Shown: positions 1,214 through 36,926 of the stretch, in pieces | How the letters are laid out: each line of letters begins with the position of its first letter | How positions within the stretch are numbered: the stretch's first letter is position 1 | Virus record (IMG/VR): IMGVR_UViG_3300005056_000001 | Span: 248,001-312,000 of that record | Direction: 5' to 3' (one strand) | Length of the DNA stretch: 64,000 nt | The notes under the pieces: model-generated | The model's database searches: none | What the model saw: only the letters and a program-made list of their open reading frames with translations | What the model was told of the DNA's origin: nothing | Made by a program: the position numbers and the translations under genes

Positions 1214-1553
1214 ACACATGATCCTTGACAAGGCATTCACACAGGAATGTCATCCGTACAACACACGCAAGGCCTTTGTTTATATGATACACAAAAAAGC
1301 CTTTGCATATTGTCCGAGTGTATGGAATTTCGATTTCGTGCCGTTAGATGGCGAACTAAAGGGGTATGTGAGGGTCAATATAAAGGATGGCGAGTTCTTC
1401 CAATTACATCGAAATGAGGTTCACCAAGAAATAGATATACCATCGGATATTATATCTTCACAGGCACCAAATGGCAATAGTCTAATTTCTGTTGTTGGAC
1501 GACCAAGAACAAGGGTGTGTATTGAAGACTTTAACCCTGAAAATGATAAATAA
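1206..1553 (+). CDS. hypothetical protein
   Basis: ORF 1140..1553; the likely start is the ATG at 1206 overlapping the upstream stop; followed by a terminator. Confidence 0.65.
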   Translation: MNRHMILDKAFTQECHPYNTRKAFVYMIHKKAFAYCPSVWNFDFVPLDGELKGYVRVNIKDGEFFQLHRNEVHQEIDIPSDIISSQAPNGNSLISVVGRPRTRVCIEDFNPENDK

Positions 1554-1585
1554 AAAAAATCCTCACCTAGTGGGGATTTTTTTTT
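1552..1585. terminator. bidirectional intrinsic terminator
   Basis: aaaaaaaatcctcac-cta-gtggggatttttttt between convergent genes. Confidence 0.75.
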
Positions 1586-2154
1586 GTTGGTAACTGAACC
1601 GATGCACTTCCTATCTTGAACGCAATGCTTAGCTCAAATGTCCCAAAGTCGTTGTTTGTGGTTTCGCTGTCTAGTGGAATATCGTCTAGTGCAGCAAACA
1701 GAAAGTCCTTGAATGAGAATACAAATGCGGTCTGACGTTTCGTGTTTTTTATCACAATGTCAAGGCTGTCTTTGATGGTGTTCTTGTGGTTGGCCGAATA
1801 CTGCCTCTGAAAACTCTCCCACAGGAATAGGTACGACATGTATGCATCCACATGATGTAGCTCAAGTGTGACCGTCTTTGAGGACAGTCCTTGTACCCAA
1901 CTTTTTGTGCCCAATTGTGGTGCTGTTGTATGACTAAAACCACCGCCTTGTTCTTGTGTCACAAAGCTGTCTGTAAATCCGACTATATTGACCTTTTTAA
2001 TGGTGGCATTCAGGAGCGATATAATGTCCTTTATATAGTCGTCGTCGTCGGCATCCATATATGTATTATATTTGTCAACCAATGACTGTTCAAACCAATG
2101 AGTTTTGAATTTCACGTCTACCAAATCAGACGATGGAGGGTTGAAGTATTTCAT
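1567..2154 (-). CDS. tail tube-like / baseplate tail-tube initiator (T4 gp54/gp19-like fold)
   Basis: 195 aa with the tube-fold pattern (TLELHHVD..YLFLWE..; FSFKDFLF..L; FELSIAF); GTACATA box at 2168-2174. Confidence 0.5.
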   Translation of the reverse strand: MKYFNPPSSDLVDVKFKTHWFEQSLVDKYNTYMDADDDDYIKDIISLLNATIKKVNIVGFTDSFVTQEQGGGFSHTTAPQLGTKSWVQGLSSKTVTLELHHVDAYMSYLFLWESFQRQYSANHKNTIKDSLDIVIKNTKRQTAFVFSFKDFLFAALDDIPLDSETTNNDFGTFELSIAFKIGSASVQLPTKKNPH

Positions 2155-3501: not shown

Positions 3502-3568
3502 TGATTTAGTACATAACAAGAAGCCCGACACAAGATTTTATATAAACAGATTTTACGTTCTGTAAAAC

Positions 3569-3922
3569 ATGACAGTAGCAGTCCGCAACAAAAATAACAT
3601 GGAAAAAACAATACAGGCAGCAAAGTACAAGTTCATAGAACTCATGAAGGGTTCTTTGTTTAAGGACGACAAACCCTCGTCATCAAGGATTTTTGGGTAT
3701 GTAATGATGCTCATAATTTTCTTGTTTTCCGTGGTATTTATTGCCACCGAAATAGGAAACGCCATACTTTCTTGGAAAAACGGAAATGTTTATGTACCTT
3801 CATGGCAAACGATTACATTTTTTGGGATGTGTTTGACGCAAAAGTTGACATTACTTGGGATTTACAAAAAAGCAGAGAGTCTTATTCCTAAAAAAACAAT
3901 CGAAAAAAAGCCTGTCCAATAA
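3569..3922 (+). CDS. putative holin / two-TM membrane protein
   Basis: DDKPSSSRIFG followed by two hydrophobic segments and a basic C-terminus; GTACATA box at 3509-3515. Confidence 0.45.
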   Translation: MTVAVRNKNNMEKTIQAAKYKFIELMKGSLFKDDKPSSSRIFGYVMMLIIFLFSVVFIATEIGNAILSWKNGNVYVPSWQTITFFGMCLTQKLTLLGIYKKAESLIPKKTIEKKPVQ

Positions 3923-3972
3923 CAAAAGGACTCACAGGTTAATGAGAATTACATAACTAAACATTGAAATAA

Positions 3973-4584
3973 ATGAGACGAGTTTTTAGATCATCACAAT
4001 ACATTCCTGTTAATATCATACAGGGTGACGATGCCGACAAATGGAACGAGAAGATCTCTGATGGTCGCCATGAGTATGTGATTAGACAACTAGATCAAGG
4101 AATTGATTACAACACGAAAACCGAAGACCTTCCAACCAATTACAACAAATACGAATCCGAGGATGGTATGCACGTTTTAGCATACGGAAAGTATTCTAGT
4201 TTTGTGGGGTTGTACAAAGAAGCAAAGTACAAGTACTTTGACAGCGATTGGTCTTGGAGCGGTCTAGGGGCTGCCCAAATAGAGGATGCTGTTGGTGTTT
4301 TTTCACATAAAGATGTCCGTAATTATTACTACATGTTCCCGCTTAGTGACTATGACAAGAACGAATTTTCTTATATAAACCTAAGAGACAATGAGGGACT
4401 ATTCAGAGTCGAAACAGAAAGAATGAAATTTGGAGGATTTAGACCCCTTGTTAAGGTCAATGTGGCACGTGGGCTTATATACTTCATAGAAGACATGGAT
4501 GTTGAACCTATATCTTTTGAAAAAAAAGGAACCAAGGTGCAATTTATGAGACTCAATCTTTCACAATCCTACATGTTGCAGTAG
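3973..4584 (+). CDS. hypothetical protein (possibly virion-associated)
   Basis: 203-aa ORF in a late-type cluster; variant box TTACATA upstream. Confidence 0.7.
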   Translation: MRRVFRSSQYIPVNIIQGDDADKWNEKISDGRHEYVIRQLDQGIDYNTKTEDLPTNYNKYESEDGMHVLAYGKYSSFVGLYKEAKYKYFDSDWSWSGLGAAQIEDAVGVFSHKDVRNYYYMFPLSDYDKNEFSYINLRDNEGLFRVETERMKFGGFRPLVKVNVARGLIYFIEDMDVEPISFEKKGTKVQFMRLNLSQSYMLQ

Positions 4585-4634
4585 CATAAACTACAAAAAA
4601 CAAAATATACTTAAATCAGTCAACAACCATCAAC

Positions 4635-5819
4635 ATGCATTTCAGAACTATAGACCCTAAATGGCTAACGCAAAACATCGTGACTATCAACGAAGAGGCA
4701 GACAGCACAGGCGAGATTGACCTACAAATGTATGTTGATGCCTATAGTGAATGGCTTTCGTCCAAGTTTGAGGACATCATTAATGTATACAAAAACGTGG
4801 AGGTAAGCACTGCCATTACAATCAATTTCATTGATGACAAGTTGGTTATCGTGGGTAGCATTCGTGGTATATCGTTTCGTGTCATGGATGAGGTATTGTC
4901 ATTTGCAGAAGACTACGACCTTTCAGGAACATTGGAATTAGGACTAAGCTACACGGCATCCTTTCCTGAAGATTTCTTTAACGAGTACTTTGAGAAGGAC
5001 GACAAAAAAGAAACCGACGAGAATGAAGAACCCGAAGAAGAGACAGACGACGACGATGTTGACGACATAAAGGACGATGATATTGACAATGCATCCGACG
5101 AGGTCAAGGAGATGCGTGAGTCCAAGGATCATATAGACCTTAACAAGGGGCTTGTCACAAAATGGTTTGACCACTTCAACAATTTATTGTTTGGTAACAG
5201 GCTTATTTTACCCCCAATTTCTTTTATGAGGTCTAAGTATGTATTGGCTAGTGTGGTATCAAACAGAAAAGTCAATGAATTGGGTAAATACCCCCCAATT
5301 TCCTTTAAGTTTAGCAGATTCTACAAGTTGGATTTGACAACATTTAAGGGTATTATGGTTCATGAAATGATACACATTGAGTTGTTACAATACGACGGTA
5401 TCGTTTCGGGCAAGGATGGTCACGGCGACGAGTTTGAGTACAGACGTGTCAGACTAAATAAACAAGTAGAGTTCGATGTCCCAAGAACCGAGAATGCAAA
5501 GCTTGAGGTTGACAGCAAGTCGGGCAAGAGATGGGATGTTATCGTTTTTAATCAGGTTGACGGCAGCAAGTCCATGCTTGTATACAAGAGCGGTTATTTG
5601 TCGGACAAGCTCGACGAGGTACAGTCAATTTTTGCATATTGGGTTACACATTACAACAAGAAAGGCGATTTTTCAATTGAGGTTTATAATACGGGTGCCA
5701 CAAACGTGGCCATGTACCGTCAAAAAAGAAATCTTAAAACAACAAATGCCCAAGTCCTAGACAGTACGCTTGCCCAAGAAATCAAAGATGAGGGCAAGTT
5801 GATCTACACCGTAAAATAA
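4635..5819 (+). CDS. SprT-like zinc metalloprotease domain protein with acidic linker
   Basis: FDHFNNLLFGNRL...IMVHEMIH...DGHGDEF is the SprT signature (HExxH plus downstream H). Confidence 0.8.
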   Translation: MHFRTIDPKWLTQNIVTINEEADSTGEIDLQMYVDAYSEWLSSKFEDIINVYKNVEVSTAITINFIDDKLVIVGSIRGISFRVMDEVLSFAEDYDLSGTLELGLSYTASFPEDFFNEYFEKDDKKETDENEEPEEETDDDDVDDIKDDDIDNASDEVKEMRESKDHIDLNKGLVTKWFDHFNNLLFGNRLILPPISFMRSKYVLASVVSNRKVNELGKYPPISFKFSRFYKLDLTTFKGIMVHEMIHIELLQYDGIVSGKDGHGDEFEYRRVRLNKQVEFDVPRTENAKLEVDSKSGKRWDVIVFNQVDGSKSMLVYKSGYLSDKLDEVQSIFAYWVTHYNKKGDFSIEVYNTGATNVAMYRQKRNLKTTNAQVLDSTLAQEIKDEGKLIYTVK

Positions 5820-15893: not shown

Positions 15894-15930
15894 AAAAACC
15901 GAACCAATACATTATTGGTTCGGTTTTTTT
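15894..15930 (+). terminator. intrinsic terminator
   Basis: aaaaaccgaaccaata-cat-tattggttcggttttttt. Confidence 0.85.
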
Positions 15931-17070: not shown

Positions 17071-17101
17071 AAAAAAAGCCTGTCAAATGACAGGCTTTTT
17101 T
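17071..17101. terminator. bidirectional terminator
   Basis: aaaaaaagcctgtca-aa-tgacaggcttttt between convergent genes. Confidence 0.85.
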
Positions 17102-20934: not shown

Positions 20935-20972
20935 AAAAAGGCAAGTCGTTATTTACAACGACTTGCCTTTTT
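20935..20972. terminator. bidirectional terminator
   Basis: aaaaaggcaagtcgtt-atttac-aacgacttgccttttt. Confidence 0.85.
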
Positions 20973-26918: not shown

Positions 26919-26955
26919 AAAAAGCACCAAATAACCGTATTTGGTGCTTTTTTTT
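26919..26955 (+). terminator. intrinsic terminator
   Basis: aaaaagcaccaaata-accg-tatttggtgctttttttt. Confidence 0.85.
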
Positions 26956-28942: not shown

Positions 28943-28980
28943 AAAAATGGTGCTTGTCTTTGACAAGCACCATTTTTTTT
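28943..28980 (+). terminator. intrinsic terminator after capsid gene
   Basis: aaaaatggtgcttgtc-ttt-gacaagcaccatttttttt. Confidence 0.9.
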
Positions 28981-30415: not shown

Positions 30416-33400
30416 TTATTGATGTATAAAATTGACCGTACAATTGCCTGTTGAAATATTGTCTAGTGACAATATTTTGACAACTGTGTCGGTTATTTTT
30501 GTTGTGTCATGTTCGACCCCGTCAACAATAACATTGGACACTCTCATCACATCAATCAATACATTCCGTATTAATGCATTTGTGATAACATCTCTTACCT
30601 CCTCGTCTGTGATATTGTCTGTATTAACATCATAAACACGCAAGGCTGTTACATATTCGTTTGGGTCAAATAAAAAGTTAATAATTCCTTGGTTGTCTAG
30701 TATTTTTCGTGCATAAACAAAAAGAACATCCAATAGATCGAACTGTCCGTCAACAAATGTTGTTCCAACAGAAAGTGTTTCTGTTACATTTATGGACTTC
30801 GACAAGAAACCACGGATCTCGGACGGTGTGTACATCCAACGTACAGGCTCTATATCGGTTTTGTTGAGACTGTACGAGTAATATAAATCTAGGTCTAGGT
30901 CGGATATATTCTTTTCAAGAATTGGTATGGCTTGACCATTTCTGCTATTATTATCAAATAATGGCAATTTTAACGATACCGAGGCTTTTCTAAACCAAAC
31001 AATATCATCATGTTTTATTTCTATCCTTGTGGTCTGCGACGGGATGATTACCGATGTTATCGGGTCGTAATAAAACGATGGTCTGATAGCAAGGAATCTA
31101 TGCACGCTTGACTCTCGGCCAACACCAAAATTTGTAAAGTCGTATGACATTGATTGATTTAACGAAATTTCTTCCTTGAATGCCATGGACATATTTACAC
31201 TTCTTTCGTTTGTGTCGTCATCAACCAAGTGTGTTGTTTTTGCATTCACGGTATTGGCAATATTACTCAGCGATATTAGTTCATATCTGTCAACACTAAG
31301 GTTGTTCGAAATGGTTCTGTCAAAAAATGCATTGTAACGTGCAATACTCTCGGCAGTCGCATATTTATTGTCATTAAACAGGATTGTGTTGTCGGCCACA
31401 TAATCGGGCACAATGTCAAAAACCACAGGAACGGTCAACTCTTTCAGTATGACCTCTATGCCTGTACACCAAAAATAGTCGCTGCCGATTTCTACAATAT
31501 TTTTGAATTCAATCTGAATCCCGAACGTTAGCGTAGAAGAAGGGTTAATGTCTCCATGAAAAATAAGAAAATCATCCCCCAATCCTAACATGGTGGTTAG
31601 GTTAAAGTTATTAACAGCAGGATTTAATTTTATATAGGCAACATCTGTTCCGTTGTCATTGTACACCCAATCTGTTCCGACAGAGGCCCCATTGTAACTT
31701 TTGGGTGTTGTGTTATCAAATAGCAACAATGAAATTGCCTCTTCGCCTAATGATGCCAAGGAGACTTCTGTGGTGTTCCCGCCCGAACTATAATACAACA
31801 CCGATCTATCAAGATGATATTCGCCAACCTCTTCCAATCCTGTTAGAATAGGTTCAGGAATAAATTGTTGTATTACAAATGTCAATGTTTTGAATGGTTT
31901 ATTTTCCAATAATTTGAATTCGATATCTGCACCGCTTGGGGCATTGTCTGATATCAACACAACCGAAAATCTATATCCGTCAAATTCGTCGGGGAATATC
32001 AACCGTATCCCACGGAAAAACACTGATGTAACTTTACTCTTGGGGTCTTTTTTGATTACAGACCACTCATGTATATCGTTTTTATAGACATCGACCCCTG
32101 TGTCCAAAATTATAGCCTCAGATATTGCATTAAGGGTATACCCATCAATCACATCGGTTCCGTACCACGGAGGCGTTCCTGACCCAATTAAATACCAAGA
32201 ATGGCTAAATTGCCCAACATCTCTATTTGGTATAGTAAGGGACGGGGTAAAACTGTCATATCTGAACGTCATAGAAGTATTAAACTTCTGTGGAGAATTT
32301 GTGACATCGAAACCATCTCGTATAGAAAGCTTGGACACCCATTCATACATAGAATTTTGTAAGAGTGAAATATCATTAAATTCTTGGAGCGGTTTATATT
32401 CGCTATCCGTTGTCGTGAAGGCAAAGTTGTTTTTATTTATGGTATCAACAAGCATCTCTGTGGAAGGAATGTCGATATTATTAAAAAAACTGTTTACGAT
32501 AACCAAGAGTTCTGCCTTATAGTCCGCAAGCTCCTGTGGGGTTGCCGAAAAATCCAATCTACCAAAAAATGTTGGGTCTGCTATTTTGTTTAGTAAATAA
32601 CTCCTGTATGTGTTCAGATCAAAGTCTAGCGGGTCTGAGTGATAGCTTATATCACGATTATAGTCGAACTTTCGATGTTCAATATTTTGCACAGCATAAT
32701 AGACAATAGGCTTTTCTACCAATAGTTTTATGTCCAACAACGGTTTGTCTGTGACATCAATATCCATTCGGTATGCAAATGTTGACACGTGTCTAAAACC
32801 CAACAACGGAACTGCCACCGAGCCATCAGAGAATCTGACGGCATCAATATCCGTTGTGATGTTTTTGGAGGCAAGTGTTAGTGTTTTTTTGTTTGTACCA
32901 AAAAGGTTTGGTATAGCACCCGTAAACGAACCAATAAAAGGCTCCAATACGGCACATGCAAATGGAACACTTGTGATTGTCACCGTTTCCAACACAACAG
33001 ACGAAATAGTTGTTATAACGTGCAGTTCATCCGAACCGAACCTACGAAAGTTTAACACAAGATTTGTTGACGTTGTCTGCAATTGGGCTGTCATCTCCTT
33101 GATAAGCAAATCAATTGTCTTAGTCACCGTGTCACCTTGTAATTCGGGTGTCATCAAAACAGACGCCTCTATATTACCATCAAACTCGAACGTGAATGCC
33201 TGATTAATGTTTGGAATCGTGTTGAACTTGATAATTGCCATGGGCGGTTTTGAAACGCCCACACTAGCCCCTTTTATCATTCCTGTTGCCTTGTACAATG
33301 GCTCTGTTAATACAATAGGAATGTCTGTTTGGACATATTCTGTTGTTAGGGCAATATTTATATCATTAAGCGGGTCTAGTTCTGTGTCAAGTATTTCATT

Positions 33401-34264
33401 GTTTTTAACATAGATCCCCACAAATTCCACAAATGTATCGTTGTTTTCTATTTTTGTGTTATCAAGACTAAATGTAAATTCCAAATTCAAAAACCTTGGG
33501 TCAATCATGTTGGCGACCTCGTATGATTTTGTCAAAAAAACCTCGGACTCTTCAATGGTTCTTTCGGAAAGTAGGTCTCCGTTTATATAAACATCACTTT
33601 CGGTGATAACACCCGAATTTATATCCATTCCAATCACAGAAACAGTATCTGTATAGTTCACACTTATACCGACTTCTTGTTCTGTAATTTCTTGGTAATG
33701 ATCGTCCAAAAACTTGCCAATTCTTGTTTCACGTGTTAGGTCATAATACTTGACCATCTCGGTATTTTCATTGGTAAGTATATTGATCCCGCTCCTTTGT
33801 ATGTTGCTGTTTAAAACAGGGTTATTGTTCCTTGACACCTTAAAGATGGCAAACCCATCAGGCACACCATCATCGCCCAAAAATAGTGGCGCAAAAAAGC
33901 GATGTGTAGAATCCACACGCTTGTCTGTGTCGCTATATGCCCCATACCTGTATAGAGTGGAGGGTTGTGACGTAAACTTTTCGACCACCTCAAAGTCTTG
34001 GTCGGGTAGTCCATAGATTGCCGACTTGTTATCGACCAAATCACAAAATCTTTTTAGATTAGACCGAAACGGTTTGTCTGTGTCGATTCTATATCCTTTT
34101 AGTTTCGAGTCTTCCATGTCCTCATTTGCACCAATACTCTCAAGATAGCACAATGTGTCATCAACCAATATTTTGATATTTCCCGAAAATTTCGGATTCG
34201 CTGCACTTATTGAGAATGTGTTCTTAAGAAGCTTTGGGTTTAATGATTCTTCCTTGAAAGTCAT
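30416..34264 (-). CDS. large virion structural protein (probably baseplate)
   Basis: 1282 aa, beta-rich, N/T/D-rich; GTACATA at 34318-34324. Confidence 0.55.
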   Translation of the reverse strand: MTFKEESLNPKLLKNTFSISAANPKFSGNIKILVDDTLCYLESIGANEDMEDSKLKGYRIDTDKPFRSNLKRFCDLVDNKSAIYGLPDQDFEVVEKFTSQPSTLYRYGAYSDTDKRVDSTHRFFAPLFLGDDGVPDGFAIFKVSRNNNPVLNSNIQRSGINILTNENTEMVKYYDLTRETRIGKFLDDHYQEITEQEVGISVNYTDTVSVIGMDINSGVITESDVYINGDLLSERTIEESEVFLTKSYEVANMIDPRFLNLEFTFSLDNTKIENNDTFVEFVGIYVKNNEILDTELDPLNDINIALTTEYVQTDIPIVLTEPLYKATGMIKGASVGVSKPPMAIIKFNTIPNINQAFTFEFDGNIEASVLMTPELQGDTVTKTIDLLIKEMTAQLQTTSTNLVLNFRRFGSDELHVITTISSVVLETVTITSVPFACAVLEPFIGSFTGAIPNLFGTNKKTLTLASKNITTDIDAVRFSDGSVAVPLLGFRHVSTFAYRMDIDVTDKPLLDIKLLVEKPIVYYAVQNIEHRKFDYNRDISYHSDPLDFDLNTYRSYLLNKIADPTFFGRLDFSATPQELADYKAELLVIVNSFFNNIDIPSTEMLVDTINKNNFAFTTTDSEYKPLQEFNDISLLQNSMYEWVSKLSIRDGFDVTNSPQKFNTSMTFRYDSFTPSLTIPNRDVGQFSHSWYLIGSGTPPWYGTDVIDGYTLNAISEAIILDTGVDVYKNDIHEWSVIKKDPKSKVTSVFFRGIRLIFPDEFDGYRFSVVLISDNAPSGADIEFKLLENKPFKTLTFVIQQFIPEPILTGLEEVGEYHLDRSVLYYSSGGNTTEVSLASLGEEAISLLLFDNTTPKSYNGASVGTDWVYNDNGTDVAYIKLNPAVNNFNLTTMLGLGDDFLIFHGDINPSSTLTFGIQIEFKNIVEIGSDYFWCTGIEVILKELTVPVVFDIVPDYVADNTILFNDNKYATAESIARYNAFFDRTISNNLSVDRYELISLSNIANTVNAKTTHLVDDDTNERSVNMSMAFKEEISLNQSMSYDFTNFGVGRESSVHRFLAIRPSFYYDPITSVIIPSQTTRIEIKHDDIVWFRKASVSLKLPLFDNNSRNGQAIPILEKNISDLDLDLYYSYSLNKTDIEPVRWMYTPSEIRGFLSKSINVTETLSVGTTFVDGQFDLLDVLFVYARKILDNQGIINFLFDPNEYVTALRVYDVNTDNITDEEVRDVITNALIRNVLIDVMRVSNVIVDGVEHDTTKITDTVVKILSLDNISTGNCTVNFIHQ

Positions 34265-34383
34265 TTATTGATATAATTTGAGAGTGTACCACAATTCGAC
34301 CTTGTGTATTTTTAAGTTATGTACCTTTAAAGGAACAAATATTCATGGTTCTGTGTTTACAAAACGAACAAAAAACATTAAAC

Positions 34384-34587
34384 ATGGCCAAGAAACGTAG
34401 GCGCAAAAATATTAAAGTAGTGGTAGACCTAGACAAGGCACTCGGAAATGGTGCCCGACAGCAGTACCTAGAAAATAACCCGCATGGATATAACAGGGTT
34501 AATAAAATTCACAAATCTAAAAAGGCATATAATCGCAAGACGAAAAATCGTTCTTGTGATTATATGTTTTCGGGGAAAAAATATTAG
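34384..34587 (+). CDS. small basic protein, candidate ribosome-rescue-factor-like
   Basis: 67 aa, K/R-rich, NKIHKSKKAYNRK; strong hairpin 34526-34566 before the stop codon. Confidence 0.6.
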   Translation: MAKKRRRKNIKVVVDLDKALGNGARQQYLENNPHGYNRVNKIHKSKKAYNRKTKNRSCDYMFSGKKY

Positions 34588-34594
34588 AAATCCT

Positions 34595-35026
34595 CTAAAA
34601 TGTATTCGAGGACTGATAATAAACACCAACACCGTTAAGAAATGAAATGTAGGAATTAAACTCGTCAATATTGTTGAATACCGCCTTGAAGTATTTTGTT
34701 GGCACATTTGTTAGGAAATGTTTCTTTGCAGAGGCCTTGGTTGCAGCCTTGGCAACCTTGGTGCCCATTGATTTGTCGTCTCCATACATAACCTTGACTT
34801 GGTACTTCCCAATGTTTTTTGACTCGCCCGTGTATATCTTTGATTCGTATGTTGCGTCAAGTATCTCGCACCATTCGTGTAGGTTGTCTGCTTCGATAAT
34901 ATAACGCAACGGCTCGTCGTTGGTGTCCATTACATAGCACTTACGTGCATAACTTTCCAATGTTTTTAAACTTTCGGGTTTGTGGGCACTATTAAAGGCT
35001 GCCCGAGCCATTCCTAATGTTATCAT
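34595..35026 (-). CDS. hypothetical protein
   Basis: 143-aa ORF. Confidence 0.7.
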   Translation of the reverse strand: MITLGMARAAFNSAHKPESLKTLESYARKCYVMDTNDEPLRYIIEADNLHEWCEILDATYESKIYTGESKNIGKYQVKVMYGDDKSMGTKVAKAATKASAKKHFLTNVPTKYFKAVFNNIDEFNSYISFLNGVGVYYQSSNTF

Positions 35027-35326: not shown

Positions 35327-35722
35327 TTACACATCAATAACCTCAAACTCGTCTTTGTCAATCCATCTGTATTTCGGGAAATGTACAAGATTTTTGCTCA
35401 TTGATCCGTCGATATTTATTCCACACACGGCATAATAAAATCTTAGACGCCCCTTGGTGTCAATCCAAGGGCTGATGTCAGAAACAATACCTTCTACATC
35501 CACAAAAGGATCCATAAGCGAGCCACCATCGTCCTTACATTTAAACACATTTACACGAACACCAATTCCCACAGGGGCAAATTGAATACACTGTCGTAAA
35601 ACATCTTTTTTCTGCTGAGCCAACTCGTCGTCTTTCTTGTTGAGTTTTGATAGTGCCAAATTATTGTCCTCAATTTCGCCTTCGATTACACGGTATTGTT
35701 TAAAGAAGTCTTCAAATTGCAT
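35327..35722 (-). CDS. hypothetical protein
   Basis: 131 aa, overlaps the ligase stop. Confidence 0.7.
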   Translation of the reverse strand: MQFEDFFKQYRVIEGEIEDNNLALSKLNKKDDELAQQKKDVLRQCIQFAPVGIGVRVNVFKCKDDGGSLMDPFVDVEGIVSDISPWIDTKGRLRFYYAVCGINIDGSMSKNLVHFPKYRWIDKDEFEVIDV

Positions 35723-36926
35723 TTTTATGGTTTTTAATTTCTATTTTCAAGGCCTTCAAAATATTTTTTGCCTTCATTTCCCAAATGGCATCCTTGAACA
35801 CACTTTCGGGATTTAATCTAAGCGAGTGTATTGGCCCAAGGAAAACACGCAAATGTTTCTTGTGATCGGTGGCTTTTTGGGCAAATGTGTAAAAATCCTT
35901 GTCACACATTTCTTTACCGTCAAGGTTGGCTACTTTTTCTTTTAATTGGTCAAACACCTGTTCGCAGCGTGCGATTAAAACATCGTACGGTGTCTTTAGC
36001 GGGTAAATTTCCTTGGCCAACAAAGGAAAGTACCCAATAATAGTTTCCTCTTCTCCTGCCCTGATAGCATCAACAAACCTCCACTTGGAGGTTATTGTTT
36101 TGTATGTTTCGTTCCATTGGTGGTGTATAACATAGGAGTTTGACTTTATCTTAAGACGGTTGCCGTGTTTGTCAACCACAACATATCCCTCAAAATTTTG
36201 ATCGCCCAACTTGACATTGTGTAAAGATTTAAGTATCTCATCCTTTCCTTTGTAGGGATACCTTTTTGGACGGTCGCAATTAAACACCATTGCAATCATA
36301 TCCAATTCATCTGTGTCATATTCCTGTAGGGTGTCCATCTCCCTTGCTGCCAACAGAACAATGTTGCCTTGTTGATAGGTGTTAATGACCTTGTTGTCTG
36401 CACTAATACATTCAAAAACATAGGTCACACCTTTTTTTGAATGTGTGAGGTCAACATGGTTTTCTTTGGCGATACGATTGAATAGGTGAGTATAATCAAA
36501 GTCTTGCTCAACCAATATGCTATGGTTATGCTTGTCACGATAGCTAACCTTATCAATTGCATACCCACTCTTTTTTGTGCCAACAACCCACTCGTTTATG
36601 ACATTATCATAGTAGCGTTGTATCATGGCACCATCCCCTTTATCCTCCCCGACCGCACTTTCCCAATCCAAAACACCTTTATGACCTGCCTTATACTCGC
36701 CAAAACGATACAAGGGCATGGACATTGCCTCGAACTTTTCGCCAACACGTTTTATAATAACCCCACGACATTCATTTGTGGTCGGGTTCTTGGGTGTCTT
36801 GAGTTGGTCATAGTGTAGAATTATTCTGTGTTCAGACTCTCTAAGCTCAAGTCTATATTTATCGACCGTGGCCTTCAGTCCTTTTTGGTTGAGCTCCTTG
36901 ATTATGTTAAGTTCCTTCTTTTCCAT
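35712..36926 (-). CDS. RNA ligase (T4 Rnl1-like)
   Basis: ECRGVI, motif I EDKGDGAM (KxDG), FECIS..N, EGYVV, RLKIKS..Y. Confidence 0.88.
   Translation of the reverse strand: MEKKELNIIKELNQKGLKATVDKYRLELRESEHRIILHYDQLKTPKNPTTNECRGVIIKRVGEKFEAMSMPLYRFGEYKAGHKGVLDWESAVGEDKGDGAMIQRYYDNVINEWVVGTKKSGYAIDKVSYRDKHNHSILVEQDFDYTHLFNRIAKENHVDLTHSKKGVTYVFECISADNKVINTYQQGNIVLLAAREMDTLQEYDTDELDMIAMVFNCDRPKRYPYKGKDEILKSLHNVKLGDQNFEGYVVVDKHGNRLKIKSNSYVIHHQWNETYKTITSKWRFVDAIRAGEEETIIGYFPLLAKEIYPLKTPYDVLIARCEQVFDQLKEKVANLDGKEMCDKDFYTFAQKATDHKKHLRVFLGPIHSLRLNPESVFKDAIWEMKAKNILKALKIEIKNHKNAI

What the first reader, a model, noticed from the sequence alone, without database searches (positions are those of the whole stretch)
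34384..34587. Small basic ORF with a terminator-like hairpin before its stop codon: candidate non-stop-regulated ribosome rescue factor
Seen: a 67-aa K/R-rich protein ending ...NKIHKSKKAYNRKTKNRSCDYMFSGKKY. A 15-bp stem (catataatcgcaaga 34526-34540 / tcttgtgattatatg 34552-34566, one G-U on this strand) with a 3-bp upper stem is followed by tttt and ends about 18 nt before the TAG. Known: arfA (E. coli) and brfA (B. subtilis) are short basic genes whose mRNAs are truncated before the stop by an internal hairpin, so tmRNA tags the protein for degradation unless trans-translation is overloaded; ArfA has a KGKGSYxR-type basic tail. Inference: a phage-borne, possibly Bacteroidota-derived, rescue factor that switches on when host defences (tRNA/mRNA nucleases) stall ribosomes. 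It would complement the RNA ligase about 1 kb away.
Basis: partly seen in the sequence, partly recalled or inferred. Interest (0 to 1): 0.72.

Follow-up and report, generated by a model that had tools for sequence, protein, structure and literature searches.

The report
Small basic gene ending inside terminator
A jumbo phage carries a real, conserved 67-residue basic protein whose transcript probably ends before its stop codon, the wiring bacteria use for back-up ribosome-rescue factors, and the same design recurs in relatives from Bacteroidota bacteria and their phages.

Summary
ORF 34384..34587 (+) encodes a 67-aa basic protein, and a 15+3-bp hairpin plus TTTT (34526-34570) ends 14 nt before the TAG.

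The gene is real. It belongs to an uncharacterised family with core G-x5-K-[VI]-H-K-S-K-K-x-Y-x-R-K, found in Bacteroidota chromosomes and in phage contigs.

In at least 20 family loci, with about 10 unrelated stem sequences, a terminator-like hairpin and T-tract sits directly after the YxRK motif and 0-115 nt before the in-frame stop. The tails beyond it are unconserved, and the T-tract reads as "FF". Control ORFs that have a detected terminator rarely show this (5 of 89). This is the brfA/arfA architecture.

Many other family members have an ordinary stop before their terminator.

Similarity to ArfA is limited to a short basic motif (P 0.004-0.025). Pfam ArfA does not match, so this is not a demonstrable ArfA member.

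Function is inferred, not shown. No RNA run was listed, and the RF2 complex prediction gave no answer.

Best reading: a tmRNA-gated, ArfA/BrfA-like factor that acts at the ribosome's empty mRNA channel, carried by a phage of a Bacteroidota host. ArfA/BrfA-type factors are not reported in that phylum.

The parts
34384..34587 (+). Small basic protein gene: 67 codons plus TAG. It has no Shine-Dalgarno sequence and an A-rich leader.
   Evidence: ORF list and sequence. 36 representative homologues were found by phmmer. A syntenic 58-aa homologue lies at L006:4704-4880. The family alignments fix the start at MAKK.
34429..34476 (+). Codons 16-31: the predicted single alpha-helix. It contains the conserved LG..R..YL segment.
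   Evidence: AlphaFold2 on alignment A3 gives a helix at residues 16-31, with mean pLDDT about 80 over residues 21-40 and 67.7 overall.
34504..34539 (+). Codons K41-K52 (KIHKSKKAYNRK): the invariant family motif K-[VI]-H-K-S-K-K-x-Y-x-R-K.
   Evidence: Invariant columns K41, H43, K44, K46, K47, Y49 and R51, with K52 near-invariant, in 35 sequences. This stretch aligns without gaps to ArfA K31-K42.
34526..34566 (+). Hairpin: 15-bp lower stem (one G-U), 1-nt bulge, 3-bp upper stem and AAAA loop. The 5' arm is made of the conserved Y-N-R-K codons. The 3' arm encodes the unconserved S-C-D-Y-M.
   Evidence: Folds at -29.4 kcal/mol, z -7.9, on the + strand and more weakly on the - strand. The same hairpin, with a compensatory C-G to T-A change and G-U to G-C, occurs in the homologue of a 178-kb viral contig (L040).
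34567..34570 (+). T-tract (TTTT) following the stem: the predicted transcript end. It is read in frame as F62.
   Evidence: Sequence. In homologues, T5-T7 tracts at the equivalent place read as FF/LF in the annotated tails.
34571..34584 (+). The remainder of codon 63 and codons 64-67 (SGKKY) lie downstream of the predicted 3' end and are probably not translated. The expected product is about 62-63 aa.
   Evidence: Inference from the terminator position. Tails beyond the hairpin are unconserved in length and sequence across the family.
34595..35026 (-). Convergent 143-aa orphan gene. Its stop lies 28 nt from the hairpin, so the hairpin could also terminate it (on the - strand the tail is CCTTTTT).
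   Evidence: ORF list and the - strand fold. It has no homologues apart from a 31%-identical protein in L006.
30416..34264 (-). Divergent 1282-aa gene (phrog_31887), part of the virion module in relatives. It served as the anchor to find related phages.
   Evidence: PHROG hit at 3.7e-164. Homologues occur in Tenacibaculum phages pT24/PTm1/PTm5, Sphingomonas phage PAU and Lak phages. Relatives at 46-66% identity were also found.
35712..36926 (-). RNA ligase (T4 Rnl1-like, phrog_562), 1.1 kb from the small gene. This is context only.
   Evidence: PHROG hit at 2.5e-30. A ligase of another family (PF09414) lies about 1 kb from the family member in L087.

Best explanation
The gene encodes a small basic factor of about 62 aa. 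It has an N-terminal Lys/Arg run, one helix and an extended Lys-rich tail.

Its mRNA is built to end at an intrinsic terminator that lies inside the reading frame, 14 nt before the stop codon. Ribosomes translating it would therefore run to the 3' end of a stop-less message. The host's tmRNA-SmpB would tag the product for degradation, and the protein would accumulate only when trans-translation is saturated or disabled. This is the circuit known for brfA (an in-ORF terminator) and arfA (in-ORF RNase III cleavage).

By analogy, the accumulated factor most likely threads its basic tail into the empty mRNA channel of ribosomes stalled on truncated mRNAs and promotes their release, probably through a class-I release factor. 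In the phage, this would keep ribosomes available when host or phage RNases flood the cell with broken mRNAs.

Shown:
- The gene is real and conserved.
- The hairpin and T-tract are there and are stronger on the gene's own strand.
- The pre-stop terminator design recurs independently across the family.
- The host signal is Bacteroidota-type.

Inferred:
- Termination actually happens there.
- tmRNA tagging occurs.
- The protein binds ribosomes and recruits a release factor.
For: 1. Real family. 36 cluster representatives have E <= 1e-3, with invariant G35, K41, H43, K44, K46, K47, Y49 and R51. Members lie in 25 Bacteroidota species genomes, 7 IMG/VR contigs and 39 metagenome loci. The gene is syntenic in the nearest relative, L006.

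2. Recurrent in-ORF terminators. These sit directly after YxRK.
- WIN and L040 share one stem, with a compensatory change.
- The Paludibacter group L022/23/25/30/32/74 uses GGAGGG or GAGAG stems, with two covarying pairs.
- Others are L042, L043, L106/107/108/110 and L083-L088.
- In total there are about 10 unrelated stems. The T-tract ends 0-115 nt before the stop.

3. Comparison with controls. Under strict criteria the family scores 12 pre-stop, 2 post-stop and 1 overlapping. Control ORFs score 2/44/11 in the phage and 3/25/4 in locus flanks.

4. The 5' arm is built from the conserved YNRK/RKEG codons. The design also occurs where the downstream gene is co-directional (L022, L023, L025, L084), so it is not only a neighbour's terminator.

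5. In the window, the hairpin is stronger on the + strand (-29.4 vs -21 kcal/mol).

6. Weak ArfA-like motif in one gapless register: K..K.K..Y.RK. The empirical P is about 0.004 against 20,000 composition-preserving shuffles, and hhalign gives P 0.007-0.008. The family consensus carries K-H where ArfA K44-H45 and BrfA K49-H50 contact 16S rRNA (PMC6881298).

7. Size and shape resemble ArfA and BrfA: one helix and a disordered basic tail, and a stand-alone gene with variable neighbours.

8. A survey found ArfA in 0 of 1,956 FCB-group genomes (PMC11633108), so there is a vacant niche.

9. The three Paludibacter-group genomes and the four GGCAG-type genomes with the pre-stop design have only two RF-1-domain genes, that is, no ArfB or PrfH.

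10. Precedent for phage-borne rescue factors: true ArfA homologues occur in phages Arash and pf16.
Against: - No transcript data. No RNA run was listed, and the DNA contigs laid on the region were uninformative.
- The window's T-tract is short (4 T, then CGGGG). The hairpin also sits 28 nt past the convergent gene's stop, so it may chiefly be a bidirectional terminator.
- Most family loci have an ordinary stop before or inside their terminator, or no detectable terminator (56 of 71 under strict criteria). This includes all Dysgonomonas copies and the window's closest relative, L006.
- Homology to ArfA is not demonstrable. Pfam PF03889 gives no hit. No PDB chain with a relevant function matches. 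hhalign against a 4-sequence ArfA profile weakens to P 0.025, probability 1.9%.
- The window's own protein has K54-N55, not K-H.
- Presence of the family is not significantly anticorrelated with a third RF-1-domain gene: 3/19 vs 67/182, Fisher p = 0.08.
- The RF2 complex prediction gave no answer.
Confidence: 0.5

Rival explanations
1. This is an ordinary small basic phage protein of unknown role, for example nucleic-acid binding. Its 3' end happens to overlap a bidirectional intrinsic terminator shared with the convergent 143-aa gene. Enough transcripts include the stop codon, and the overlap has no regulatory meaning.
For: A convergent gene ends 28 nt from the hairpin, and a T5 run follows on the - strand. 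Convergent genes also abut the small ORF in L040, L030, L032, L074, L083 and L085-L087. The phage has about 95 strong terminator-like hairpins, many scored on both strands. Most family members have ordinary stops.
Against: The pre-stop position recurs with about 10 unrelated stems, including loci with co-directional downstream genes. Among control ORFs with a detected terminator, only 5 of 89 have it before the stop. The stems are built from the conserved YxRK codons. The window's hairpin is markedly stronger on the small gene's strand.
Confidence: 0.22
2. The design is a genuine non-stop, tmRNA-gated circuit, but the protein is not a release-factor-dependent rescue factor. It could instead be a ribosome-associated or RNA-binding effector, or a sensor. 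Examples are a translation modulator, a hibernation-like factor, or a phage sensor of host translational stress.
For: All the architecture evidence applies. The link to rescue rests only on analogy and a weak motif. There is no predicted RF2 contact. The distribution is patchy, at 19 of 201 Bacteroidales species.
Against: To my knowledge, the natural genes known to be wired this way (arfA, brfA) are both rescue factors (PMC6881298). The basic tail, size and K..K.K..Y.RK(x)KH motif fit mRNA-channel binding.
Confidence: 0.2
3. The small ORF is a leader peptide of a transcription attenuator. Translation through the hairpin controls read-through into downstream genes.
For: The ORF overlaps a terminator, as leader peptides do.
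Against: The peptide is conserved at the protein level across phyla-wide contexts. Downstream genes are unrelated between loci and often convergent. In the window, nothing co-directional follows.
Confidence: 0.03
4. The ORF is not a gene. The region is only the promoter and terminator spacer between two - strand genes.
For: The ORF lies alone on the + strand between two - strand genes. The single sequence has no Pfam or PHROG hit.
Against: There are 36 representative homologues with invariant residues. Both a syntenic and a non-syntenic copy occur in other phages, and chromosomal copies occur in Bacteroidota.
Confidence: 0.02

Closest known systems
BrfA (YqkK) of Bacillus subtilis
   Same: Both are small stand-alone genes with a rho-independent terminator inside the coding region, a few codons before the stop. 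The mRNA is therefore non-stop and the product is tmRNA-tagged (PMC6881298). The active form is about 62 aa. Both have N-terminal helical and C-terminal basic parts. The Lys-His motif is present in the family consensus.
   Different: No sequence similarity was detected: no PDB chain of the rescue factors matched the family profile. The phylum differs (Bacteroidota and phages vs Bacillus). Only part of this family has the in-ORF terminator. RF2 dependence is untested.
ArfA (Pfam PF03889) of beta/gamma-proteobacteria
   Same: A hairpin lies before the stop, with an unconserved tail beyond it. A gapless 29-31-residue alignment puts family K41, K44, K46, Y49, R51 and K52 on ArfA K31, K34, K36, Y39, R41 and K42. 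The distance from the Tyr to the end of the truncated product is similar: about 13 residues here against about 16 in ArfA, the ArfA figure (an active form of about 55 residues) being from my own knowledge rather than a tool result.
   Different: The Pfam ArfA model does not match the window, the phage genome or any of 37 members. hhalign probabilities are only 2-5%. ArfA mRNA is cut by RNase III, whereas here a T-tract terminator is present. ArfA's GKG and DPLF residues are absent, and the family's invariant His43 and Gly35 are absent from ArfA.
Pfam DUF7230 (PF23876)
   Same: 13 of 37 family members give weak hits over the KVHK..Y.RK stretch (best E 5.8e-5). A DUF7230 cluster of viral proteins is among the nearest language-model neighbours.
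   Different: All hits are below the gathering score (23.6 vs 27 bits). The window's protein and the phage genome do not match. No hit was found in 201 Bacteroidales genomes, 19 of which carry this family. DUF7230 has no known function.
Phage-encoded ArfA homologues (Salmonella phage Arash gp99c; unannotated ORF in Pseudomonas phage pf16)
   Same: They show that large phages carry alternative-rescue-factor genes.
   Different: They are true ArfA-family proteins (KKGKGSYRR) in phages of gamma-proteobacteria. They end at an ordinary stop a few codons after the motif, with no pre-stop hairpin.

Membership tests
ArfA (PF03889) | Significant match to the ArfA profile or sequence | tested here: not met
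   There is no Pfam hit at E <= 1-10 for the window protein or for 37 members. The PF03889 search of the phage genome gave 0 hits, while E. coli scored 89.7 bits. hhalign gives P 0.007-0.025 and probability 2-5%. The shuffle test gives P about 0.004 for the short motif only.
ArfA (PF03889) | A hairpin inside the ORF that truncates the mRNA before the stop | tested here: met
   At the sequence level, a hairpin at 34526-34566 plus TTTT lies before TAG 34585, and this recurs in homologues. Actual truncation was not measured.
ArfA (PF03889) | Recruits RF2 to non-stop ribosomes | tested here: inconclusive
   A complex prediction of a Paludibacter family member with its own RF2 returned 'no answer' (score 0.00). 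Biochemistry is needed.
BrfA-type (in-ORF intrinsic terminator, tmRNA-gated rescue factor) | A rho-independent terminator within the coding region, upstream of the stop | tested here: met
   For the window. At least 20 family loci have a stem plus T4-T7 ending 0-115 nt before the stop. The control base rate is 5 of 89.
BrfA-type (in-ORF intrinsic terminator, tmRNA-gated rescue factor) | Product is SsrA-tagged and accumulates only without trans-translation | not testable with these tools
   No RNA or protein data were available, and no RNA run was listed.
BrfA-type (in-ORF intrinsic terminator, tmRNA-gated rescue factor) | Sequence similarity to BrfA | tested here: not met
   Family profiles found no rescue-factor chain in the PDB at E <= 10. 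PDB entry 6SZS holds BrfA according to PMC8012679.
ArfA/BrfA shared feature | A Lys-His motif in the basic tail that contacts 16S rRNA near U534 | tested here: inconclusive
   The family consensus is Y-x-R-K-x-K-H-K, and many members carry K-H. The window has K54-N55, L040 has K-G, and the Paludibacter and Dysgonomonas members lack it.
Pfam DUF7230 (PF23876) | Score at or above the gathering threshold (27 bits) | tested here: not met
   The best member scores 23.6 bits. The window protein has no hit, and the phage genome has no hit.

The most novel reading that the evidence does not exclude
This is a previously unrecognised family of tmRNA-gated alternative ribosome-rescue (or stalled-ribosome-sensing) factors, native to Bacteroidota and repeatedly captured by their phages. 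The in-ORF terminator that makes the mRNA stop-less has been invented independently about ten times at the same codon position. The jumbo phage would use its copy as a self-limiting switch that turns on only when the host's trans-translation is overwhelmed during infection or abortive-infection RNase attack.
Probability: 0.4. Interest if true: 0.85.

Novelty: new variant of a known kind. Interest (0 to 1): 0.78.

Why it matters
Release-factor-dependent back-up rescue factors are known only in beta- and gamma-proteobacteria (ArfA, ArfT) and Bacillus (BrfA). Reviews state that more should exist but cannot be found by sequence similarity (PMC8012679, PMC6881298). A survey found ArfA in 0 of 1,956 FCB-group genomes (PMC11633108).

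The signature used here is a conserved small basic ORF whose terminator lies in frame, so that the T-tract is read as "FF". It gives a concrete, directly testable candidate for Bacteroidota, a phylum that includes major gut and marine lineages. It also gives a search recipe for further families.

Finding such a gene in phages, next to true ArfA homologues in other phages, would add ribosome rescue to the translation functions that large phages bring along. That bears on phage-defence conflicts that act through RNA cleavage.

Tried and rejected
- Close DNA or protein relatives of the window. None were found in the phage collection or IMG/VR for the small ORF, the 143-aa gene or the N-terminus of the 1282-aa gene. 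Relatives were reached only through the 1282-aa protein and the exhaustive phmmer search.
- Pfam, PHROG and NCBIfam. The small protein has no hits.
- PDB profile searches. No relevant hits.
- RNA evidence. No RNA run was listed. The two DNA runs gave only identical contig fragments.
- Complex prediction. A Paludibacter family member (residues 1-62) with its own RF2 fragment gave 'no answer'. This is not evidence either way.
- Co-occurrence with a third RF-1-domain gene (ArfB or PrfH) in 201 Bacteroidales. The result was 3/19 vs 67/182, p = 0.08, which is inconclusive. The third gene in Dysgonomonas looks like PrfH, not ArfB.
- Search for more copies of the window-type hairpin in IMG/VR. Only L040's contig was found.
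- Upstream 10-mer GTTATGTACC, shared with L006. It is not enriched in the genome.
- Conserved gene neighbours in bacteria. None were found; the neighbours are unrelated housekeeping genes.
- A 4-sequence ArfA profile. It weakened rather than strengthened the ArfA link.
- The 80-aa start at 34345. Rejected from the homologue alignment.
- MAFFT alignment of the Paludibacter hairpins. It is not structure-aware, so formal pair counting was not run; compensatory changes were read directly from the sequences.

Full report
**1. Observation**

The sequence is exactly as described.
- ATG 34384 to TAG 34585-34587 encodes 67 aa.
- A 15-bp stem (34526-34540 / 34552-34566, one G-U) carries a bulged 3-bp upper stem and an AAAA loop, and is followed by TTTT (34567-34570).
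- The stop lies 18 nt after the stem.

The + strand RNA folds at -29.4 kcal/mol (z = -7.9; 0 of 200 shuffles fold as well). The - strand version is weaker (-21 kcal/mol, z = -3.7) because the G-U pairs become A-C mismatches.

The 5' arm consists of the codons for A48-Y-N-R-K-T53. The 3' arm encodes S57-C-D-Y-M61, and the T-tract is F62. A transcript ending a few nt after the T-tract would encode about 62-63 residues and no stop.

**2. Setting**

The window is bases 248001-312000 of a 368-kb, 38% G+C virus genome with 4 tRNAs and no tmRNA.

The neighbouring 1282-aa gene has distant homologues in Tenacibaculum phages pT24/PTm1/PTm5, Sphingomonas phage PAU and Lak megaphages, next to their portal and neck genes.

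The phage's long ORFs almost never have a Shine-Dalgarno motif (2 of 195, against 5% background) and have A-rich leaders. This is the Bacteroidota style of initiation. DNA runs holding the sequence are seawater and subsurface metagenomes.

The small ORF is the only + strand gene between two - strand genes: it is divergent from the 1282-aa gene and convergent with a 143-aa orphan.

**3. The ORF is a real gene**

Word-based searches found only the gene itself. An exhaustive phmmer search of 1.84 billion representatives found 36 proteins with E <= 1e-3.

The closest related phage fragment is L006, whose 1282-aa homologue is 66% identical. It has a 58-aa homologue in the same divergent position.

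Pattern-plus-tblastn scans found the family in three collections:
- 25 Bacteroidota species genomes: Dysgonomonas, Paludibacter, Microbacter, Prevotellaceae, Bacteroidaceae and Aureispira;
- 7 IMG/VR viral contigs of up to 334 kb;
- 39 metagenome contigs.

In a 35-sequence core alignment, G35, K41, H43, K44, K46, K47, Y49 and R51 are invariant. The motif is G-x5-K-[VI]-H-K-S-K-K-x-Y-x-R-K, often followed by x-K-H-K.

Homologues begin MxKKK, which fixes the start at 34384.

AlphaFold2 with this alignment predicts one helix (residues 16-31) and an extended basic C-terminal half (mean pLDDT 67.7).

The family is present in 19 of 201 sampled Bacteroidales species. Bacterial copies are stand-alone genes with unrelated housekeeping neighbours.

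**4. The pre-stop terminator is a family trait**

In the protein alignment, conservation stops right after YxRKxK. The annotated tails run from 0 to about 47 further residues, are unrelated to each other and often contain FF.

The DNA explains this. In many loci, a stem-loop followed by T4-T7 lies directly after, or overlapping, the YxRK codons, and the in-frame stop comes only 0-115 nt later.

Examples found without regard to tail length:
- the window;
- L040, which has the same stem as the window, with C-G to T-A and G-U to G-C changes;
- the Paludibacter group L022, L023, L025, L030, L032 and L074, with stems GGAGGG.../...CCCTCC or GAGAG.../...CTCTC and two covarying pairs;
- the viral contigs L042 and L043;
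- four Bacteroidales genomes, L106, L107, L108 and L110, with stem GGCAG....

All six members that I picked because of their long tails (L083-L088) have textbook terminators 36-115 nt before the stop.

Altogether there are about 10 unrelated stem sequences at one position relative to the protein motif.

With one strict rule (stem dG <= -9 kcal/mol plus TTTT), the family scores 12 pre-stop, 2 post-stop, 1 overlapping and 56 undetected. Control ORFs of at least 120 aa score:
- 2 pre-stop, 44 post-stop and 11 overlapping in the phage;
- 3 pre-stop, 25 post-stop and 4 overlapping in the locus flanks.

The design occurs both where the next gene is convergent and where it is co-directional. Downstream genes are unrelated between loci. 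That argues against both an attenuator and a merely borrowed terminator.

Many other members do not follow the design. All Dysgonomonas copies, L015, L038, L047-L052, L058 and others have an ordinary stop just before or inside their terminator.

L006 has lost the 3' arm. A TnpB (IS605 OrfB) gene sits right after the 5' arm, with the 12-mer ATAATCGCAAGA on both sides.

**5. What this architecture is known to do**

brfA of B. subtilis contains a rho-independent terminator within its coding region. [quoted passage not shown] To my knowledge these are the known natural uses of this wiring, and both proteins are release-factor-dependent ribosome rescue factors with basic C-terminal tails that occupy the empty mRNA channel. 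They also share a Lys-His contact to 16S rRNA.

The family here shares the wiring, the size and the basic tail, and its consensus carries K-H at the corresponding place. The window's own protein has K54-N55.

**6. Relation to ArfA**

E. coli ArfA was taken from NC_000913. hhalign and HMMER both choose one gapless register, with the window's residues 31-61 on ArfA 21-51. In it, family K41, K44, K46, Y49, R51 and K52 fall on ArfA K31, K34, K36, Y39, R41 and K42.

Against 20,000 shuffles of ArfA, even when only its basic segment is shuffled, the score is reached in about 0.4% of cases. hhalign gives P 0.007-0.008 and probability about 5%.

The link does not hold up as homology:
- The Pfam ArfA model matches nothing here.
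- The PDB profile searches found no rescue factor.
- A 4-sequence ArfA profile lowered the hhalign result to P 0.025, probability 1.9%.

I therefore treat this as a shared short motif, convergent or very distant, and not as membership. Pfam DUF7230 gives only sub-threshold hits to some members and none to the window.

**7. Other tests**

- Genomes with the pre-stop design that I checked have only two RF-1-domain genes, RF1 and RF2. These were three Paludibacter-group genomes and the four GGCAG-type genomes.
- Dysgonomonas alginatilytica has an ordinary stop and a third, PrfH-like gene. Bacteroidota PrfH with a C-terminal tail was recently reported to rescue non-stop ribosomes (PMC11741408).
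- Across 201 genomes the anticorrelation is not significant: 3/19 vs 67/182, p = 0.08.
- A complex prediction of a Paludibacter member with its RF2 gave no answer.
- No RNA run could be listed.

**8. Phage angle**

True ArfA homologues exist in the records of Salmonella phage Arash (annotated as "ribosomal protein L2") and Pseudomonas phage pf16 (unannotated). They end at ordinary stops shortly after the KKGKGSYRR motif. Phage carriage of alternative rescue factors therefore has precedent in sequence databases. I found no paper describing it.

An RNA ligase lies 1.1 kb from the small gene in the window, and a ligase of another family lies about 1 kb from the member in L087. That is too few cases to call a linkage.

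**9. Verdict**

The most likely mechanism is a tmRNA-gated, ArfA/BrfA-like factor. My confidence in each step is:
- that the gene is real, about 0.98;
- that the window's mRNA is mostly non-stop, about 0.7;
- that the protein acts in ribosome rescue, about 0.5.

It is not a demonstrable member of ArfA, BrfA or DUF7230. I rate it a new variant of a known kind, in a phylum where ArfA was not detected (0 of 1,956 FCB-group genomes in the PMC11633108 survey) and no BrfA-like factor is reported in the papers I read, and in phages.

Noticed in passing
L119:598-741 (Salmonella phage Arash gp99c) and L120:595-738 (Pseudomonas phage pf16, unannotated; overlaps pf16_199 on the other strand): True ArfA-family ORFs (…DPLF..KVEKPKKGKGSYRR…) occur in two large phages of gamma-proteobacteria. 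One is annotated 'ribosomal protein L2'. Both end at an ordinary stop a few codons after the motif, with no pre-stop hairpin, so they look like constitutively 'pre-truncated' ArfA.
   Followed up: partly
L006 3470-3481 and 4730-4741 (minus strand), TnpB gene 3537-4688: In the window's closest relative, a TnpB (IS605 OrfB / Cas12f-like) gene sits directly after the 5' arm of the hairpin of the small gene. The 12-mer ATAATCGCAAGA stands on both sides of the insertion, and the 3' arm of the hairpin is gone.
   Followed up: partly
Whole phage genome (G000); window 1-64000: Long ORFs are depleted of Shine-Dalgarno motifs (2 of 195 vs 5% background) and have A-rich -13..-3 leaders, pointing to a Bacteroidota host. 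The genome has 4 tRNAs (Ser, Tyr, His, Ala) and no tmRNA.
   Followed up: yes
window 35712-36926 (-); L087 2819-3303: An RNA ligase gene lies about 1 kb from the small basic gene in two unrelated phage contexts: T4 Rnl1-like phrog_562 in the window and Pfam RNA_ligase PF09414 in L087. This is too few cases to judge linkage.
   Followed up: partly
Whole phage genome; e.g. window 15894-15928, 17072-17101, 20935-20972, 26919-26952, 28943-28977: About 95 strand-specific strong hairpin+T-run sites (dG <= -14 kcal/mol) were found, many scoring on both strands. The phage appears to rely heavily on bidirectional intrinsic terminators. The one at 34522-34570 scores only on the + strand.
   Followed up: partly
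window 34316-34325; L006 about 4966-4957 (minus strand): A 10-mer GTTATGTACC, followed about 4-5 nt later by AAGGAAC, is shared upstream of the small gene in the window and in L006. It is not enriched elsewhere in the genome (1 exact copy; 25 with one mismatch vs 26 expected).
   Followed up: yes
L099 (Dysgonomonas alginatilytica G003:C4), ORF 1471-2088 (-): The third RF-1-domain ORF of this genome starts MSSKIYLQITSGRGPAECC…. By recall it resembles PrfH rather than ArfB. Counts of 'extra RF-1 domain genes' in Bacteroidales therefore mix ArfB and PrfH.
   Followed up: no
L094:886-1944 and equivalents (L089, L095, L096): The RF2 (SPF-motif) genes of the Paludibacter and Aureispira genomes start their long frame at …GGIFD…. 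This is as expected if prfB carries the usual programmed +1 frameshift near codon 25.
   Followed up: no
L040 3143-3240 (minus strand): The tail of the small ORF in the 178-kb viral contig overlaps, antisense, the end of a short ORF with an HNH-like …CANCHRIRHAKEHK terminus. This may be a remnant homing-endonuclease gene convergent with the small gene.
   Followed up: no
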